A stretch of DNA of 64,000 nucleotides from Syncephalis fuscata S228 (lineage: Eukaryota; Fungi; Zoopagomycota). The notes under the pieces were generated by a model, which had not been told where the DNA came from, searched no databases, and saw nothing but the letters and a program-made list of their open reading frames with translations. Each line of letters opens with the position of its first letter. The stretch's first letter is position 1. Shown in pieces: positions 46,075 through 58,320 of the stretch. The stretch covers positions 62,001 through 126,000 of the forward strand of contig JAHLTZ010000015.1 of the NCBI GenBank assembly GCA_025786725.1, in the 5' to 3' direction. A program made the position numbers and the translations under genes.

Positions 46075-49000
46075 ATGAGGTAAGCGCGAATATCCGCTAT
46101 GCCGGAGAGACGATAGTATATGAACACAGCTGATGTTCGTTTACTTGCTACTTTGCCTTTCCAGTGACGACGGCAAGCCCGATACGACTGGCTCATCGGT
46201 CGATCGGCCGCATTTAGCCAATATTATGCTTGATTTTGGCTATAAATGCTGTTCTTCGCCCACGGCTATCCGCGATCTCTTTTCGCACTACGATGTGAGC
46301 GAGTCAAACCCGTTGCCAGTCGAGGAGATTGCTCGTATTTTAGGAATGATGGCTCGGACACACGTGAGCCTAGAGGCCACTACAGGTGTAGATGGCGCTT
46401 TGGCTAAAACGTGGAATCCAACTATATTTGCCAGTGCATTGGCTGAAGTGGTAAGTTACAGTGAGGTGGACAGCATATTGTCTATTATAACTACAGCGAC
46501 TTTATGGTTAATGTGTTGATATTAGCAACCAAGCCTCGATTGGGACAAGGTTTTGGAGTGTTTGGACTATCCGGATTTTATGATATTTGACCAAGATGGG
46601 CTCTTTTTAGTAGCTAATGCTTATCGCACAGGCTGTAAAGTAAGCATGACTCATACTAGTGCATCAACAATAACTTGTTACTAACTACTAACTATAACTG
46701 TGTAGGATAACCGTCCATTGCCAAACTCTTTACTATTGAAAAACTGGGAAAATCGACGTGGCCATTATAGCTTATTGAAAAATGCTATATTCTGTTCACC
46801 AGATTTGGCTGATTTTGCATCTGATGCATCTGAAAAGATTTTACAACCAGACGATGGATTTGAATTAAATGCCAATATGAAAGCCATGGCTGTTACTTTA
46901 TCCTCTCATAAATGGAATTCAATAGCACTATTTGAGACATTAACGTCATTTCATGATACGGAAATGGCTGGTGATCTACGCTCTTTACTAGAGAAGATGG
47001 CCAAAATGTCGGCCGAACTGGTGTTTCTTGGATTACTGCAAGTGGATGTAAGTACCTGTGTGTTACCTGTATGCATTCATTCTAATGCGCTGCATATATG
47101 CATAGAGAGAGAAATGGAGTGAATTGCACCAAGAAATGCTTTCAAAGCTACTATTTCTATTCCTTACTGGGCATCCAAACGCCAGTTTAATTCTATCACG
47201 TCTATGGACACTTAATGGCGATTTATTGATATCAGGCTTACTTGAAATGTATAAGAAGGATGCCAATTCTTTATCGCGTATTCTTGATATTGCCCAGGAC
47301 CTTAAGGTAGATAGCAAATATATTATCTGTATTTAATGTTTAAATACAGTTAAACTAACTGTTTGTCTTTATAGCTTATTACAACGTTATTAAGCGTAGA
47401 ATCGTTTGGATTTGCCATTGATTTAGCAGCACTCGCTTCACGTCGTGAATATTTGAATTTAGAGAAATGGCTGCAAAATTCAATTACCAAACATGGCGAT
47501 AGCTTTGTTGTAACTTGTTTGGCCTTTTTGAAGCAAAAAATGACTGAGGAAATATCACGGCAAACTCGAAATGTGCCATCGCAATCAGTGCCGTTATCGC
47601 TTGAAGTGAATGCAATTTTTCTTCGTGTTTTAGAGCGCAGGTATGGCTATTGCGCAACTATTTATTGACAATCTAACTTATTTGAATGATCTAGCACTAT
47701 GTCGCCTGAAAACAATAGCCACTTTAAAGAAATTCGCAATATATGCTTACAAGTGCATCCACGTCTTATGAACGTTGGTGCTGCATCAGAAGAATTGGCC
47801 AGTGGATCAGAAATGACCTTTTCCAAAGATGTAGACGATGAAGTTAATACACAATATGAACGCATTTATCGTGGCGACATGTCAATGGAAGCGGTAGTCG
47901 ATCTATTGACTCGTTTAAAGAATTCACCAGATCCATGGCAGCAACAAGTATTTGCCTGTATGGTGCATAATTTATTCGACGAATATCGTTTTTTTCCAAA
48001 GTATCCGGATAAGGAACTAGCTATTACTAGCGTCTTATTTGGATCATTAATTCGCTATCAATTAGTGTCTTACACGCCATTTGGCATTGCGTTACGCTAT
48101 GTATTGGATGCACTACGTAACCAGCCAGGTTCAAGAATGTTCCGCTTTGGTATACAAGCATTGGCGCAGTTTCAGTCTCGTTTAGCTGAATGGCCACCAT
48201 TTTGCGAGCATTTATTGCAGATTCCACATTTGCTTCAAGTTCATCCGGAACTAGTTCAATATGCTCGTTCTGTAGTATCAAATACCAATCAGCCTGCTTC
48301 GTTACCTCAATCGTTGCAACAACAACAACAAAAGCCACCGCATGTATCACCAATCACACATGCTGCTGCTACACCACAATCGGTCGGTGGCAGTAATATG
48401 GCTATGACGCCTGAACCGCATCTACCAGGACCATCTGGACCACCAGCACCGGCGCCGTCTATTCGTGGCCCTACTCAAGTGTTCAATTCAGTTCATGCCG
48501 ATAAAGACGGAGAAGAAATCCATACACCACCCGAACAGCTACAGGACTGTATTCTATTCAATATCAACAATTTGGCCGACAATAATTTAATGGAGAAGCT
48601 GAATGAATTACGTCAAGCAATTGAAGAGCCGGCATTTGCATGGTTTAGCCAGTATTTGGTAGTTAAACGTGCCAGTTTGGAGCCGAATCAACATGAACTT
48701 TACTTGAAGATGCTAGACATGCTAGAAAAGCCTGATTTGATTAAGAATGTACTTCGACAAACATTGTTTAATATTCGAATACTTCTCAATTCGGAGAAAA
48801 CTGTTGAATCATCGTCAGAACGTGCTCTACTTAAAAATCTTGGCTCCTGGCTTGGTGGTATGACGCTAGCTCGTAATATTCCTATTAAGCATAAGCATAT
48901 TGCTTTTAAGGATTTGCTGATTGAAGGCTACGACAGCGGTCGGCTTATTGTAGCCATTCCATTTGTAGCCAAAGTATTGGAACAAGGCAAACGGAGCAAA

Positions 49001-52000
49001 GTATTCCGTCCGCCCAATCCATGGCTAATGGGCATTCTTCGTCTATTGGTTGAATTGTATCATTTTGCCGATCTAAAATTGAATCTTAAATTTGAAGTTG
49101 AAGTGTTATGCAATGCATTCCAGATTAAAGTAGATGGTAAGTGATTTAGCATTACTAATTGGTCGGCTAACCTAATATAACATGGCATTTATAGATATTG
49201 AGCCGACTGCAATGCTGAAAGATAGGCCACCCAAAGAGCTATTGGACTCATTTACAGCAGCTGGTGCTGTGGATCCATTATCATTCGGCTTTCCAGCGCA
49301 GTCTAATGGCACTTCAGCCTCTTCGGCTCCATTGACTCAGCCGTTCCCATTGCCACAAGGATTGACGCAACAACAAGCACAAGCCATTTCCACCTCTCAA
49401 ATACCAGCATCTGGCGATCATCGTGGCTTTGCCAATAACACTAACACTAATAATAGCGCTAATCTTGCTGGACTTGATGATACAACAGCAGCAAGTATTG
49501 GCCTGTCTAATCTGGCTACATTCCTTCACTTTGATCCAAGCTTTTCATTGTTTATGGCCCAGCCTATGTTAAAGCGTATGTTCCATATTGCTATTGACAG
49601 AGCTATTCGTGAAATTATTGGACCAGTGGTTGAACGATCGGTTACCATTGCCGGTATTTCTACTCGTGAGCTTGTTGTTAAAGACTTTGCTTTAGAACCA
49701 AATGAGGATAAGATGCGACATGCTGCCCATGCCATGGTACGCAGTCTAGCGGGTAATTTGGCTTTAGTTACTTGTAAAGAGCCATTACGGGTTAATATTA
49801 TTAATCATGTACGCACATTACTACTTCAAAACGGCTATCACGAATCCAATTTGCCCGAAGATTTAATTAGTGTTACTGTGGAAGACAATATTGAGCTGGC
49901 CTGCTCTATTGTTGAACGAGCTGCTGCTGAGAAGGCAGTGCCAGAGATTGATGACATTCTTTCTACATCGTTTAGTAATCGCCGCAAACATCGCGAGGTA
50001 AGTGTAAGCAATGGTACAATTAATGAAATATAATAACGTATATATATATATAATGTTATTAGCGTATGGGCCAGCCTTATTATGATATGACGGCATATTC
50101 TGCATCTCGTTATCCAGCCAACTTGCCAGATCCACTACGACTTAAACCTTCTGGCTTATCGGCTGGTCAATTGCGTGTTTATGAAGAATTTGCCAAAATT
50201 GTATGTGATATTACAGCTTAATAAGTTATGACTAATCTTTATTACTATTATTCTAGTACGGCGCAGCTGGTCCAGATATTATGAGTGGAGGCAATACTGC
50301 TGCTGTTGCTGCCGCCGCTTCATCACAGTCTATGCAGCTACAAGCACAGCAACAGCTTCAAATGCTACAGTTGCAATCACAATCACAATCCAGTGCTCAT
50401 GCACAAGATCCATATCGTGTATCAGCCGATGAACAACAAACTTTAGAACGTTTTGCTGTAAGTGATTTAAACTAATCATTTATTATTTCTTTTATTCATA
50501 TGTTTTAATGTTTAGCAATATGTTGCCGAGTTGGATAGCAAGATTAATGCTAATGCTGATATACCATGGAAGAAATTACCAGTTCATCATGATATTAACG
50601 TACTAATGCGACAAATCTCATTACTGGCCGGCCAGTCACGCCAACGAGACGATGTAGCATTGACCTTTTCGCAAAAAGTGGTTCAATTGCTATACAAGAA
50701 CGATTTGAATTGTCGCGCGATGTTTACGTGATGCTTTTGGAGCATTTATGTAAAATATCCGTCAAGGTCAACAAAGAAGTTACCGCATGGCTTTTATATG
50801 CTGATGATGAGGTAATGATATAATGTATATATATATATATAGTCGATCAGTACTAATAATCTAATAATAGCGCAAATATAATGTACCCGTCACAGTTGCA
50901 TTAATTAGAGCAGGCCTAGTTCATGTAACCGAATTGGACGTTCAATTAGCCAAACTAATGGAAGCCAATCGACCAGCGGCTATTGAATTTGCTGCCAAAC
51001 TAGCCCGTCAATGCCTGTTTGATCCACAACAGCCATGTGCAACGCGTAACCAATTTGCCAACACGCTAGCTTCATTGGCACGAATTGCCCAACGTGGTAA
51101 TGTATCTGAAACGTAAGTTATCTCTTATATATCTCTTTACTTATTAGTATATCTCTAACACCATTACATTTAGTGTTGAAGAATTGTTAAAAGAAATCAA
51201 GTCAGGTCCTTCTCAGCCTAGTGATTTGTCCATGGCTGCCATGACCACCCAAAACGGACAGTTAACTGTCGGTGGTGATTCCATGTCCAGTATACGCGAT
51301 CAACTTGTGTTTATATTCGGTGAATGGGTGCGTCTCTATCAACATCCATCATCTAATGAAAAATCGCTTAATGCATTTGTTGATCAAGTAAGTATTAATT
51401 GCTTAACGTTGAAGTGAAATAGTTTATTTACATTAATGTATCTAGGTTCAACAACAAAATATTCTACAAGATGAAAATACATTTTCACTCTTTTTCCGTA
51501 TTAGTATTGAATTGGCCACAGAGATTTACCAGAAACAATCTACGGTACCAAGCAGTTCAAGCCAGGCCGCCTATCAACCAGTGGATGCCAATGCGAAATT
51601 GATTGCCCTTCTTGTCAAAACATTTAACGAAGAAACTGGCGGTATTAGCCGAGCTGCTTATTTCCGTAAAATACTATCGATTATCGTTCTAGTGCTAGTG
51701 AATGAGCACGAACTACGTCGACAGGAATTTAACCAAAAGCCATTCTTCCGTTTACTAGTTGGCCTTTTGACCGAGTTGAACTCCGGCGATACTCTGTCGA
51801 ACGATGAACATTTTGCACTATTACAAGCATTTAGGTAAGTCTATAGTTAATGTATTGAAAGTAATTAATTATAATGTTCTAGTGAAACATTCCACACTTT
51901 GCGACCATCTTTCTTGCCTGGATTTACATTTGCCTGGGTATCGCTTATTTCACACCGGCTATTTATGTCCAAGTTACTATTGGCACCAGATCGTCGTGTA

Positions 52001-53168: not shown

Positions 53169-53370
53169 TACAAGGATACTATTTATCCTACAATGAAGGA
53201 TACAAAATAATGGCTACAACAACAATTGCAACTATCATTTCCAGTACTGTTTGCATTCTATTATTGTTTTGAACCACGCACTTTTTTAAACACTTGCATA
53301 AATAAATCGAATTGCTAATCAACTATTATTACTGTTCTTATATTATAACTATTTGCTACTACTATTAATA

Positions 53371-54833: not shown

Positions 54834-55290
54834 AGTGCAATCCTAATGTAATAGACCACGACAATAGCAAGACTAACAGTGTAATGAAAGGTGTGAAACG
54901 AGGTTGGCCATTACTAAAAAACGAATAGTCTACTATTTTGTAACCACTTTCTCTCATCACACTACAGACACAAAGATTGTCACATCTAGTTACAGATTGC
55001 ACACTTCTACTTACTTCTCTTATTGCCTTGTCTATTCAATATAGATCAGCTTAATAGCCTGGTCTATTTTTAATAGAGACAGGGGTGTCAATACAAAAGT
55101 ACACTTAACTATTAGAAGGATAGTCTTGTACTTCTCCTTCATCCTATTGACTTGTCCACACCTATTTATTAGGTAAAGCAGGCACTGTAGAAATACTCAT
55201 CTACAGTCCTTGCACTTATCGTTTGATTAACGTCTTGACTATCTATTAAGTTCTTTTCTACTCTTCTTCTTCTTTTGCTCTACACTTTGC

Positions 55291-55310
55291 GTGTGTGTGT
55301 GTGTGTGTGT
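55291..55310. repeat. (GT)10 microsatellite
   Basis: Read directly, upstream of SGF73. Confidence 0.85.
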
Positions 55311-55545
55311 TTGTGTGTAGTCGCCTATACTTGGTGGTGTTTACACCTTAGTAGTGAGCGTGTGAGTGAAGTCTATTATTGTTACGGAAATAATCTCCGA
55401 TATCTACTTGTCAGTAGTAGTCTATTCAATAGTAGTGCTATTATTATTATTGATAGTAGTACTCTACTCTACATGATACGCACGAGTATTATTCGGTTGG
55501 TATAGTGTTGGCTAGTTATCAGTACCGAATACATCTTATAACATC

Positions 55546-58320
55546 ATGGCAAGTAACACGGCAACGAATAACCATGGTCATAGTGGCAGTAAAAGCGGCA
55601 ATAACCATGCAACTGCTACGGCAACAACAACAACGCCAAATAATAACAATCGAAAGTCTAAACGAGACCACGATAATAATCACGCGACAGACAGTCGAGG
55701 TAAACCTTTAATGGCAGCAGCAACCACAGTTCTTGGTGCTGAAATGGCCAGTGATCGTTTATCATGGCGTAGTATTCAATCATGGAGAGATTTAGTTACC
55801 GGCTGTGATCCAGGTAAATTAATTAAATGTATTTAGTAATAATTATAGAATAATTGACCATATCTATTATCTATTATCTATTATATATTATATATTATTA
55901 CATTTAGTAAATCCGCCACCAAAGCTGACTGATAAATTACCTGTCACAACAGGCCTTGATGCACGAGATATCCTTTAAACGTTTAAATAGAATTAAATAC
56001 TAAGATAAGTAGCTACCTTGACTATAATTGAATTACAGATGAAAGTGCATGGCGATATTCCAATGGAGGATAGACGTGTTATTATGTCGTGCAATGGCTG
56101 TGGTAAAGCATTGTTAACAAGTAGTGTGACACGGCATTATGGTAAGCCATCCGTATTAATAATAGTATAAAACTAATAGTGTATAATATTTATTATTGTA
56201 CAGAGGAATCCTGTCCTGCAACTGAACCAGATCGGCCACATCTTGAGGCATTGGCACGTAAACGAGCCGAGGAAGAAGTACGAGCCCGTACAAATTTACA
56301 AGAGAAACAACGCATCAGGTACCGTGAACGTGAACGTGAACGTGGTCGAGGCGATCGTAGTCTATCACGGGAAAGAGATAGAAAAGATACTAATAGTAAT
56401 CATGGTGATGGAGACAGTGCACCAAATACACCGAAGAAATTAGCAAATCGTAAAAGGCGTCTGGTTAATAAGGAAGAGCATGATTCACCGAATAGCGGAT
56501 CTAATAACAATTCAGGTAAGTAAATGGAATTAATAATAGCAAGCTACAGTATTAACCCTTTATTATAGATACGCCCAAAGAGGAGAAAGTAACTAAAAGG
56601 CTCAAAACACGGGCACCGGGTACACCGTCCAAGTTGAATCGGAATAAGATACCAGAGAACAACGACGATGAAAACGATGAAGATAATGAAAAGTCAGACT
56701 GTCCACCGGCTAATGAATCTGAATTAGAAGAGCCGAAAGCAAAACCAGAAACAAACGATGAAAAACCAAAGAATTCAACAAAGAAACGAAAGAAGGCCAA
56801 CAATGACAACAACGATGACGCTAAAGTTGGCGATAAAGAGGCGACACCAGCGGAAGAAGGACAGAAACAAAAGGAAACAGAGGAAACGCCACAAGAACCA
56901 ACATCACCGCCACCACCAAAGAAGAAGAAGAAGGCCAAAGCCAAAGCAGCACCAAAATCTAATCGAAACAAAGGTAAAAAAGCTATTTGATATTATATTT
57001 ATATATTAATGATTTATATTTATTAGGCCCTATTGATCTTGATAAACAATGTGGTGTTACGCTACCTAATAATCTACCTTGTTCTAGATCACTTACCTGT
57101 AAAACACATTCAATGTCATTGAAACGTGGTGTGGTTGGTCGATCTCAGCCCTATGACGTATTGTATGCTGCCTATCAAGCACGTGCTCAAGCTCTTCGAG
57201 GTAATTTAGATTAATAGTTATAAACGCGAATCACTTTATTTATATTCGTACAATTATTTGAATAGCATTGCAAAATGGAGGCGTGGTACCCACGGCAACA
57301 ACAGCTCGTCAACGGGCTACTGCCAATGCCGCAGCTACTGCAGCAGCTCTCGCTAATAACTCTGGCTATGATATCGATATGGACTCGGAAGAGGAGCTTG
57401 ATACCATTGTTGAAGCTATGCAAGTGGCACCACCCCAGCCACTGGCAGTTCGTCCCCGGCCTGGCGCCTATGGAAAGCGTCGACGGCAGTGTTTTCGTAT
57501 GCGAGAGCTATTACTCGATGCTTTATGCGGTCAAACGCCTGATCTGGTCCAATACGTAACCCGATGGACAAGTCATAGCGAACGCATTTTAAATGCACAT
57601 TCTCCAGCGTCATTAGAGGTGAACGACATGAATAAGCATGCCATGATGACACCGGTCACACCGACGGCAATGACAACAATTGCAACCACACCCATTACTA
57701 CACCGACGGCCATGACCTCGCCTACTACCATCATGGCCACACCTATGACTACACCGACAACAACGATGCAAACGATACCCTCACCCTCTTCACTTATACT
57801 TACATCGTCGCCTTCTATTACTGGACTAGTATCACCAACCCATCCATCACTTGTTCTACCCACTTCTATGACTAATGATAATGGCAGTAATTTAACTGTA
57901 CTATCACCGGGACTCACTCTACCACTGTCGTTACCACCACCATCCACGTCATCAAGGACATCTACACCGGCCCCTTCATCTGCTATGCCTATTGATGACG
58001 ATTTGCCTATTTCTATGCTAAATACAAATATGGTACTCTCATCGCCTACAGCAACAACAACGCATGCTATGGCTGCTGTTGCTGCGGCCACCGCCAATCT
58101 ACAATTACAACAACAACAGCAGCAATCATACCAAAACTTCCATGTAGGCTCTTCTACCAGTAATACACATCCATTACTAGCCGGTCTTACGATGGAACAA
58201 CTTACAAGTGGATCGGTCCAAAATGTCGTTGGTATGAACAATACCAATGTATTAGGATCACCTACACTGCCATCACCGGCCACACTAACCACCGGTCTAT
58301 CATTTTCTGGTGGCTTTTAA
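55546..58320 (+). CDS. SGF73: SAGA deubiquitination-module subunit Sgf73/Ataxin-7
   Basis: N-terminal zinc finger CNGCGK...RHYEESC, SCA7 domain [39 protein letters not shown] and DSEEELD.IV.A....PQPL. Confidence 0.93.
55968..56036 (+). other. U12-type (minor spliceosome) AT-AC intron in SGF73
   Basis: 5' splice site ATATCCTTT (55968-55976), branch site TACCTTGAC (56014-56022) and 3' end TTAC (56036). Splicing gives CGA G|AG ATG AAA GTG, in frame with the zinc finger. Confidence 0.88.

What the first reader, a model, noticed from the sequence alone, without database searches (positions are those of the whole stretch)
55968..56036. U12-type AT-AC minor intron in SGF73/Ataxin-7, implying a working minor spliceosome in this fungus
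Seen: exon 2 ends ...GAT GCA CGA G and is followed by ATATCCTTT rather than GT. TACCTTGAC lies 15 nt (branch A at 56021) before a TTAC end, with no polypyrimidine tract. AT-AC splicing gives [15 protein letters not shown]...CNGCGK, whereas the AG two nt downstream gives a stop within about 10 codons. Established: RTATCCTT and CCTTRAC close to the 3' site are the U11/U12 recognition sequences; Dikarya lack the minor spliceosome and only some early-diverging fungi keep it. Inference: this compact genome must retain U11/U12/U4atac/U6atac, and at 69 nt this is a very short minor intron. It is the only minor-type intron among the introns I read here. The phase-1 position just before the M..(F/H)G..P motif may match an intron in animal ATXN7-family genes (from memory, unverified), which would make it an ancient opisthokont intron.
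Basis: partly seen in the sequence, partly recalled or inferred. Interest (0 to 1): 0.85.

Follow-up and report, generated by a model that had tools for sequence, protein, structure and literature searches.

The report
Conserved AT-AC minor intron in SGF73
The 69-base gap in this fungus's SGF73/ataxin-7 gene is almost certainly a real minor-spliceosome (U12-type, AT-AC) intron. Four other early-diverging fungal lineages carry the same intron at the same codon, but such introns are already known in these fungi, so the find is sound rather than surprising.

Summary
Window 55968-56036 starts ATATCCTTT, carries CCTTGAC with its branch A 15 nt before a terminal AC, has no pyrimidine tract, and interrupts the gene in phase 1.

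Joining 55967 to 56037 gives [21 protein letters not shown]. This fits the conserved Sgf73 motif of other fungi residue for residue. The only frame-keeping GT-AG alternative would delete conserved residues.

New here: an AT-AC, phase-1 intron sits in the same codon in Basidiobolus, Diversispora, Paraglomus and Jimgerdemannia. It is absent from Gongronella, Phycomyces, Umbelopsis, Mortierella, Dimargaris and Batrachochytrium. It is therefore old and was lost repeatedly. Three public gene models are wrong at this spot.

The genome encodes U11 and U6atac above Rfam thresholds, a full-length U12 candidate below threshold, and PDCD7/59K-type and SNRNP25-type domains. U4atac was not detected. The U12 motif pair occurs 38 times genome-wide against 3 in the control.

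The animal ATXN7 comparison could not be run.

Minor introns are already documented in Zoopagomycota and Glomeromycota, and this scan had already noted several in this same genome. Sixty-nine nt is ordinary here. This is a new member of a known kind, of modest interest.

The parts
55546..55813 (+). Exon 1 of the SGF73/ataxin-7 homologue (ATG at 55546; ends in phase 1)
   Evidence: Reading; ORF.
55814..55907 (+). Intron 1, ordinary GT-AG (GTAAAT...TTAG).
55908..55967 (+). Exon 2, encoding [20 protein letters not shown] plus the first base (G) of the split Glu codon
   Evidence: In alignment A1 PVTTGLDAR lies on the conserved P-V/A-T-T-x-L-D/N block of other fungal Sgf73 proteins.
55968..56036 (+). 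U12-type AT-AC intron, 69 nt, phase 1
   Evidence: Orthologous introns seen.
55968..55976 (+). 5' splice site ATATCCTTT, a perfect match to the minor consensus RTATCCTTT
56016..56022 (+). Branch-site box CCTTGAC (context CTACCTTGACT); branch A at 56021, 15 nt from the 3' end of the intron
56035..56036 (+). Terminal AC of the intron. The AG at 56037-38 belongs to the exon and completes the split codon G|AG = Glu.
   Evidence: AC is conserved in all five species, whereas the following AG is not.
56037..56141 (+). Exon 3, encoding (E)[34 protein letters not shown], most of the Sgf73-type zinc finger
56204..56515 (+). Exon 4. It begins (E)ESC, the last zinc ligand, followed by a charged linker. 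Preceded by the GT-AG intron 56142-56203.
56569..56973 (+). Exon 5, a Lys/Glu-rich linker. Preceded by the GT-AG intron 56516-56568.
57027..57200 (+). Exon 6, the SCA7 zinc-binding domain. Preceded by the GT-AG intron 56974-57026.
   Evidence: Pfam PF08313, E 6.4e-27, 93.7 bits.
57266..58320 (+). Exon 7, ending in the TAA stop at 58318-58320. It contains the conserved DSEEE...PLA...[15 protein letters not shown] block. Preceded by the GT-AG intron 57201-57265.

Best explanation
Window 55968-56036 is a genuine U12-dependent (minor-spliceosome) intron of the AT-AC subtype in the gene for the SAGA deubiquitinase-module subunit Sgf73/ataxin-7. By analogy with the established pathway, the steps are as follows. 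The U11/U12 di-snRNP recognises the intron as a unit: the U11 5' end (AAAAAGGG) pairs with ATATCCTTT, and the U12 box AGUAAGGA pairs with CCTTGAC, bulging A56021. U4atac/U6atac.U5 then joins, and U6atac (AAGGAGAGA) replaces U11 at the 5' splice site. Two transesterifications join G55967 to A56037 and create a Glu codon (G|AG). This restores the conserved ...LDAR-E-MKVHG... entry into the Sgf73 zinc finger. An unspliced transcript would terminate three codons into the intron (D-I-L-stop). The intron is inherited, not new. An AT-AC phase-1 intron occupies the same codon in Basidiobolus, two Glomeromycotina and an Endogonales species, and has been lost in several other lineages. Shown here: the sequence anatomy, the frame and protein conservation across the join, the positional conservation in five lineages, and the presence of three of the four minor snRNA genes plus two minor-specific protein domains. 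Inferred: actual excision in vivo and the order of snRNP steps.
For: (1) Anatomy: a perfect 5' splice site, a branch box 15 nt from a terminal AC, and no pyrimidine tract.
(2) The join gives [21 protein letters not shown]. In alignment A1, exon 2 and exon 3 flank exactly one column, which is D in the Mucoromycota Sgf73 proteins, e.g. PVTTRLDVK-D-MDIFG and STKLNAR-D-MKTFGNMPMED.
(3) Among all frame-keeping donor/acceptor pairs, the only GT-AG options start at 55943 (GTCACA) and delete the conserved VTTGLDARE. The gene's five other introns all begin GTAA.
(4) The same site, phase 1 and AT-AC ends are found in four other species:
- Basidiobolus, L013 2532-2602: ATATCCTTG, TTTCCTTGACT, branch A 11 nt from the 3' end.
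- Diversispora, L014 2865-2963: ATATCCTTT, AATCTTTGACA, 15 nt.
- Paraglomus, L019 2790-2948: ATATCCTTG, CTTCCTTAACA, 11 nt.
- Jimgerdemannia, L022 1986-2085: ATATCCTTT, TCCTTAAT, 11 nt.
The deposited Basidiobolus protein model P0043 (...IQYEYMSSVGG) already uses the AT-AC join.
(5) Machinery in the same genome: U11 at 47.5 bits (cut-off 39), U6atac at 37.8 bits (cut-off 33), and a full-length U12 candidate at 34.6 bits that keeps AUGAGUAAGGA and an Sm-like site. PDCD7 scores 29.2 bits and the SNRNP25-type Ubiquitin_4 domain 38.1 bits, both above their Pfam cut-offs.
(6) The genome holds a population of like introns: 38 motif pairs against 3 in the control.
(7) Literature: minor introns are documented in Zoopagomycota and Glomeromycota (PMC10639083).
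Against: There is no transcript evidence. The only run that holds the locus is of uncertain type. U4atac was not detected. The U12 candidate is below Rfam's gathering score, and zf-U11-48K gave no hit. Duplex energies of this intron's motifs with the U11, U6atac and U12 candidates are no better than those of shuffled motifs, so the pairing is canonical by eye but is not evidence in itself. The branch box has A where the consensus has T/C (ACCTTGAC rather than TCCTTRAC).
Confidence: 0.93

Rival explanations
1. The interruption is removed by the major spliceosome as a GT-AG intron from 55943 (GTCACA) to 56038 (TTACAG), possibly using TACTAAG at about 56000-56006 as a U2-type branch site. The ATATCCTTT and CCTTGAC motifs would then be coincidental.
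For: This is the only GT-AG pair that keeps the frame. A TACTAAG string lies 32 nt upstream of that AG. In Paraglomus, annotators modelled a GT-AG intron ending at the equivalent AG.
Against: It deletes VTTGLDARE, which aligns with a conserved block in other fungal Sgf73 proteins. The donor GTCACA is unlike the GTAA donors of the gene's other five introns. The AG after the AC is not conserved in Basidiobolus, Diversispora or Jimgerdemannia, whereas the AT and AC ends are. A chance motif pair at this exact spot is very unlikely, given 3 control hits in the whole genome.
Confidence: 0.03
2. The gene really starts at the ATG at 56039 (MKVHG...). What are called exons 1-2 would be untranslated leader or a separate small ORF, so no intron needs to be removed from the coding sequence here.
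For: An ATG immediately follows the proposed acceptor. Some database models begin at or just before the equivalent M: P0134 and P0069 at the M, and P0195 within the unrecognised intron.
Against: Exon 2's PVTTGLDAR aligns with coding sequence upstream of the M in full-length homologues. P0134 begins at the M only because it is the first ATG of an ORF that continues upstream on a contig with no intron there. P0195 begins inside an unrecognised U12 intron, and P0069 has a longer cluster partner, P0273, whose locus carries the intron. Exons 1 and 2 are open and phase-compatible.
Confidence: 0.03
3. Assembly or sequencing artefact: the true ends are GT...AG, or the gene is a decaying pseudogene.
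For: Raw reads could not be inspected.
Against: Two independent errors would be needed, and they would have to create perfect minor-intron motifs. Five species from independent assemblies show the same AT-AC architecture. The 792-codon frame is intact.
Confidence: 0.01

Closest known systems
U12-type (minor) introns of early-diverging fungi, as catalogued by Larue and Roy 2023 (PMC10639083): Basidiobolus meristosporus n=249, Rhizophagus irregularis n=205
   Same: Same splice-site and branch-site consensus, a location away from phase 0, residence in an old housekeeping gene, and the same fungal groups (Zoopagomycota and Glomeromycota).
   Different: This particular gene and intron are not discussed in that paper's text, and the one supplementary file held for it has no Syncephalis, Piptocephalis or Thamnocephalis entry. 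The survey worked from annotated introns, so introns that public models mis-annotate would be missed, as in the three SGF73 models found faulty here.
The orthologous intron in Basidiobolus meristosporus SGF73 (protein model P0043, assembly GCA_002104905.1)
   Same: AT-AC ends, phase 1, the same codon before the conserved Met, about the same length (71 against 69 nt), and a TTCCTTGAC-type branch box.
   Different: The split codon is Tyr (T|AT) rather than Glu (G|AG), the interior sequence is unrelated, and the branch A lies 11 rather than 15 nt from the 3' end.
Animal AT-AC U12 introns (human and mouse lists in PMC6717393)
   Same: Identical recognition motifs (for example ATATCCTTT with ...CCTTGAC...) and, by inference, the same U11/U12-U4atac/U6atac pathway.
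   Different: Animal minor introns are usually hundreds to thousands of bases long. ATXN7, ATXN7L1, ATXN7L2 and ATXN7L3 are not in those lists, so this host gene is not a known minor-intron gene in mammals.

Membership tests
U12-type (minor-spliceosome) intron, AT-AC subtype | 5' splice site matching RTATCCTT(T), starting at intron base 1 | tested here: met
   ATATCCTTT at 55968-55976.
U12-type (minor-spliceosome) intron, AT-AC subtype | Branch-site box (T)CCTTRAC close to the 3' splice site (branch A about 10-15 nt away), with no polypyrimidine tract | tested here: met
   CCTTGAC at 56016-22, A56021 15 nt from the 3' end, and an AT-mixed tail. The position before CC is A rather than T/C.
U12-type (minor-spliceosome) intron, AT-AC subtype | Terminal dinucleotides AT...AC, with a join that preserves the reading frame and the protein | tested here: met
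   The join gives LDAR-E-MKVHG, matching homologues column for column. The total coding sequence is 2379 nt and in frame.
U12-type (minor-spliceosome) intron, AT-AC subtype | Host genome encodes the minor snRNAs U11, U12, U4atac and U6atac | tested here: inconclusive
   U11 (47.5 bits) and U6atac (37.8 bits) are above Rfam cut-offs. U12 is full-length but scores 34.6 bits against a cut-off of 53. U4atac was not found by the model or by a pattern designed from U6atac.
U12-type (minor-spliceosome) intron, AT-AC subtype | Host genome encodes minor-spliceosome-specific proteins | tested here: met
   PDCD7/59K (PF16021, 29.2 bits) and the SNRNP25-type Ubiquitin_4 domain (PF18036, 38.1 bits) both exceed their cut-offs. 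zf-U11-48K gave no hit. 65K, 35K and ZRSR2 were not tested.
U12-type (minor-spliceosome) intron, AT-AC subtype | Positional conservation as a minor-type intron in orthologues | tested here: met
   Same codon, phase 1 and AT-AC ends in Basidiobolus, Diversispora, Paraglomus and Jimgerdemannia.
U12-type (minor-spliceosome) intron, AT-AC subtype | Spliced junction observed in RNA, and excision dependent on U11/U12 | not testable with these tools
No functional assay is available.
SGF73 / ataxin-7 family (SAGA deubiquitinase module) | SCA7 zinc-binding domain | tested here: met
   PF08313, E 6.4e-27, on exon 6.
SGF73 / ataxin-7 family (SAGA deubiquitinase module) | N-terminal Sgf73-type zinc finger (C-x2-C-x11-H-x4-C) preceded by the M-K-x-[YFH]-G-x-x-P motif | tested here: met
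   Exons 3 and 4 encode [11 protein letters not shown]...[21 protein letters not shown]. This aligns with Mucoromycota Sgf73 proteins, and the profile matches Sgf73 and Ataxin-7 chains in the PDB.
SGF73 / ataxin-7 family (SAGA deubiquitinase module) | Physical membership of the SAGA deubiquitinase module | not testable with these tools
   Inferred from homology only.

The most novel reading that the evidence does not exclude
The SGF73 AT-AC intron is an ancient minor intron. Its presence at least in the common ancestor of Zoopagomycota and Mucoromycota is strongly indicated here. It may go back further, to the opisthokont ancestor, so that an intron at the same phase-1 position before the M-x-x-[FH]-G motif of animal ATXN7-family genes would be its descendant, now converted to U2-type. 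That would give a traceable case of minor-to-major conversion in a disease gene family.
Probability: 0.2. Interest if true: 0.45.

Novelty: new member of a known kind. Interest (0 to 1): 0.3.

Why it matters
The result confirms that this fungus splices with a second spliceosome, but that is already the published expectation for its group.

The practical value is in annotation. Gene predictors that allow only GT-AG or GC-AG introns break SGF73 at this point. Three public models are demonstrably wrong there (Diversispora epigaea P0216, Paraglomus brasilianum P0273, Jimgerdemannia flammicorona P0195), and the same will hold for other minor-intron genes in these genomes.

The five-lineage conservation and the scattered losses add one clean, datable marker for how minor introns are retained and lost in fungi. 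They also point to SGF73 as a gene in which minor-to-major conversion could be looked for outside fungi.

Tried and rejected
- RNA evidence. The look-up of sequencing runs found one run of uncertain type holding 69% of the words. Queries used coordinates up to 55812 or from 55907 onwards. One local regex in a script scanned the whole window file.
- U4atac. The Rfam model gave nothing at the default setting and a meaningless 21-bit hit at E 2.8. A pattern complementary to the U6atac stem II found only U6atac itself and chance sites. Rfam scans of those loci found nothing.
- zf-U11-48K (PF05253) gave no hit.
- Duplex energies of the intron motifs with the snRNA candidates were no better than those of shuffled motifs, so they were dropped as evidence.
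- Other RTATCCTT sites in the window (5979+, 41866+, 53172-, 53196-) lack a branch box and are not minor introns.
- Animal ATXN7 gene structure. No animal seed sequence could be obtained: the hit lists are filled by fungi, the literature search gave no exon map, and the look-up of encoding contigs is exhausted.
- Close relatives (other Zoopagales) and the genome's own annotated protein did not appear in the listed hits.
- The ZnF exon of Geosiphon was not found in the locus fetched.
- The joined (spliced) protein was never built for, or sent to, any search. Exons were searched one by one, by reference.

Full report
**Observation**

- Exon 2 (55908-55967) ends ...GAT GCA CGA G.
- The next nine bases are ATATCCTTT, a perfect minor-spliceosome 5' splice site.
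- CCTTGAC lies at 56016-56022. Its branch adenosine (56021) is 15 nt before the last base of the intron (56036).
- The intron ends TTAC, and the tail between branch box and 3' end is not pyrimidine-rich.
- Joining 55967 to 56037 creates a Glu codon (G|AG) and continues [23 protein letters not shown]...
- Using the AG two bases further on with the same donor shifts the frame into a stop at the 12th codon.

I re-derived all exon borders by reading. The exons are 55546-55813, 55908-55967, 56037-56141, 56204-56515, 56569-56973, 57027-57200 and 57266-58320. With the AT-AC join they sum to 2379 nt, that is 792 codons plus TAA. All six introns are phase 1, and the other five begin GTAA.

**Is it more than chance?**

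The 8-mer RTATCCTT alone is not significant: there are 5 in the window against 5.8 expected. The combination is.
- In the window, only this site couples the 5' motif to a branch box at a usable distance.
- In the whole 29.4 Mb genome, RTATCCTT-N25-55-CCTTRAC occurs 38 times against 3 for the backwards control.
- This copy sits at the one position where the reading frame needs a splice.

**The gene**

Exon 6 is an SCA7 domain (PF08313, E 6.4e-27). A profile of fungal homologues plus the window's exons matches Sgf73 chains of solved SAGA complexes and human Ataxin-7. The best homologues are Sgf73/SCA7 proteins of Mucoromycota, Glomeromycotina, Basidiobolus and Dimargaritales.

**Which join is right?**

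I enumerated every GT/GC/AT donor and AG/AC acceptor pair that keeps both exons open and in frame. The only GT-AG options start at 55943 (GTCACA) and would delete VTTGLDARE.

Homologues show that these residues are coding and conserved. Examples are PVTTRLDVK-D-MDIFG (Mucor), STKLNAR-D-MKTFGNMPMED (Gongronella) and SPSTTRLDMN-D-MKIYG (Pilobolus). In alignment A1 the window's exon 2 and exon 3, entered as separate rows by reference, flank exactly one column, which is the split codon. The AT-AC join therefore reproduces the family's sequence and spacing, and the GT-AG rival does not.

The joined spliced protein was never submitted to any search. Exons were searched one at a time, by reference.

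**Orthologous loci (the main new result)**

I fetched genomic loci for eleven homologues and read them. An AT-AC, phase-1 intron sits in the codon immediately before the conserved Met in four other lineages:

| Species | Locus and position | Length | 5' splice site | Branch box | Branch A to 3' end |
|---|---|---|---|---|---|
| Basidiobolus meristosporus | L013 2532-2602 | 71 nt | ATATCCTTG | TTTCCTTGACT | 11 nt |
| Diversispora epigaea | L014 2865-2963 | 99 nt | ATATCCTTT | AATCTTTGACA | 15 nt |
| Paraglomus brasilianum | L019 2790-2948 | 159 nt | ATATCCTTG | CTTCCTTAACA | 11 nt |
| Jimgerdemannia flammicorona | L022 1986-2085 | 100 nt | ATATCCTTT | TCCTTAAT | 11 nt |

- The intron interiors are unrelated. 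Only the recognition motifs and the AT and AC termini are kept.
- The AG that follows the AC in the window is not conserved, which argues for AC as the real 3' end.
- The deposited Basidiobolus model (P0043, ...IQYEYMSSVGG) already uses the AT-AC join.
- The models for Diversispora (P0216), Paraglomus (P0273, which reads through as ...DILVNAIV) and Jimgerdemannia (P0195, which starts inside the intron) are wrong at this point.
- The site is continuous coding sequence in Gongronella (L012), Phycomyces (L015), Umbelopsis (L016), Mortierella (L023), Dimargaris (L018) and a soil metagenome contig (L011).
- Batrachochytrium (L017) has a long intron without minor-type motifs about eight codons upstream, and none at the site.
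- The Geosiphon locus (L024) did not show the zinc-finger exon, so it says nothing either way.

The simplest reading is an intron present in the common ancestor of Zoopagomycota and Mucoromycota that was lost several times.

**Machinery**

In the window's own genome:
- U11 scores 47.5 bits (cut-off 39; C112:215199-215380). Its 5' end is AAAAAGGG.
- U6atac scores 37.8 bits (cut-off 33; C315:4451-4610). It has AAAAGGAGAGA.
- A full-length U12 candidate scores 34.6 bits, below the cut-off of 53 (C157:67826-67997). It keeps CUUAA, AUGAGUAAGGA and an Sm-like site.
- U4atac was not found, either with the Rfam model or with a pattern designed from the U6atac stem. The search scores only a subset of candidates, so this is a gap, not evidence of absence.
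- Two minor-spliceosome-specific protein domains are present above their Pfam cut-offs: PDCD7/U11-59K (29.2 bits) and the SNRNP25-type ubiquitin-like domain (38.1 bits). zf-U11-48K gave no hit.
- The base pairing of this intron's motifs with the snRNA candidates is the textbook one by eye. Duplex energies do not beat shuffled motifs, so I do not count them as evidence.

**What could not be done**

There is no transcript evidence. One run of uncertain type holds 69% of the locus's words.

The human and mouse minor-intron tables of PMC6717393 list ATXN10 but no ATXN7-family gene. If the position is shared in mammals, it is therefore not as a minor intron.

**Comparison with what is known**

Larue and Roy (PMC10639083) report minor introns across early-diverging fungi.
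- Basidiobolus has 249 (0.554% of its introns), which they place in Zoopagomycota.
- Rhizophagus has 205.
- They find none convincingly in Ascomycota or Basidiomycota.

Earlier notes of this scan record several other AT-AC introns in this same genome. One follow-up names the organism as Syncephalis fuscata and another estimates 100-200 minor introns genome-wide. I did not verify the species name. My motif count agrees in kind with such a population.

A minor spliceosome in this fungus is therefore expected, and 69 nt is an ordinary length for its minor introns.

**Verdict**

Its sense of rarity was overstated. The added value of this work is the five-lineage conservation of the intron, the pattern of losses, and three faulty public gene models. 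This is a new member of a known kind, with interest of about 0.3.

Noticed in passing
L014 2501-4340 (Diversispora epigaea, P0216); L019 2001-4210 (Paraglomus brasilianum, P0273); L022 2001-3644 (Jimgerdemannia flammicorona, P0195): The public gene models of SGF73 in these three genomes are wrong at the unrecognised AT-AC intron. One skips to a false GT-AG intron, one reads into the intron, and one starts translation inside it.
   Followed up: yes
window 47699-49141 (+) and L017 5536-7171 (-): A CNOT1 gene (CNOT1_TTP_bind and CNOT1_CAF1_bind domains) lies about 6 kb upstream of SGF73 in the window. A CNOT1 gene is also the immediate neighbour of the SCA7 gene in Batrachochytrium dendrobatidis. 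This may be old synteny.
   Followed up: no
L014 4729-5318 (-): In Diversispora epigaea an EnY2/Sus1 gene (PF10163) lies directly beside SGF73. Its product is a partner of Sgf73 in the SAGA deubiquitinase module.
   Followed up: no
window 55546-58320: All six introns of this gene, five GT-AG and one AT-AC, are in phase 1. All five GT-AG introns start GTAA and are 53-94 nt long.
   Followed up: partly
window 55290-55320: A (GT)n microsatellite of about 30 nt lies about 230 nt upstream of the start codon of SGF73.
   Followed up: no
window 53172-53203 (-): Two GTATCCTT strings lie 24 nt apart on the minus strand, followed by a TACTGAC branch-like box and an AG. This looks like an ordinary U2-type intron whose donor happens to resemble the minor consensus, and it has no CCTTRAC box.
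   Followed up: partly
G000:C153:5684-5700 and C316:59030-59046 (L009, L010): Two near-identical loci in the genome share a (TA)n-centred hairpin that weakly resembles a microRNA family (28 and 24 bits, far below the cut-off). This is probably a repeated element.
   Followed up: no
L012 5591-7734, L015 4809-6222: In Gongronella and Phycomyces a GATA-type transcription factor gene follows SGF73. In Rhizopus the two are merged or clustered in some protein models (cluster 9).
   Followed up: no
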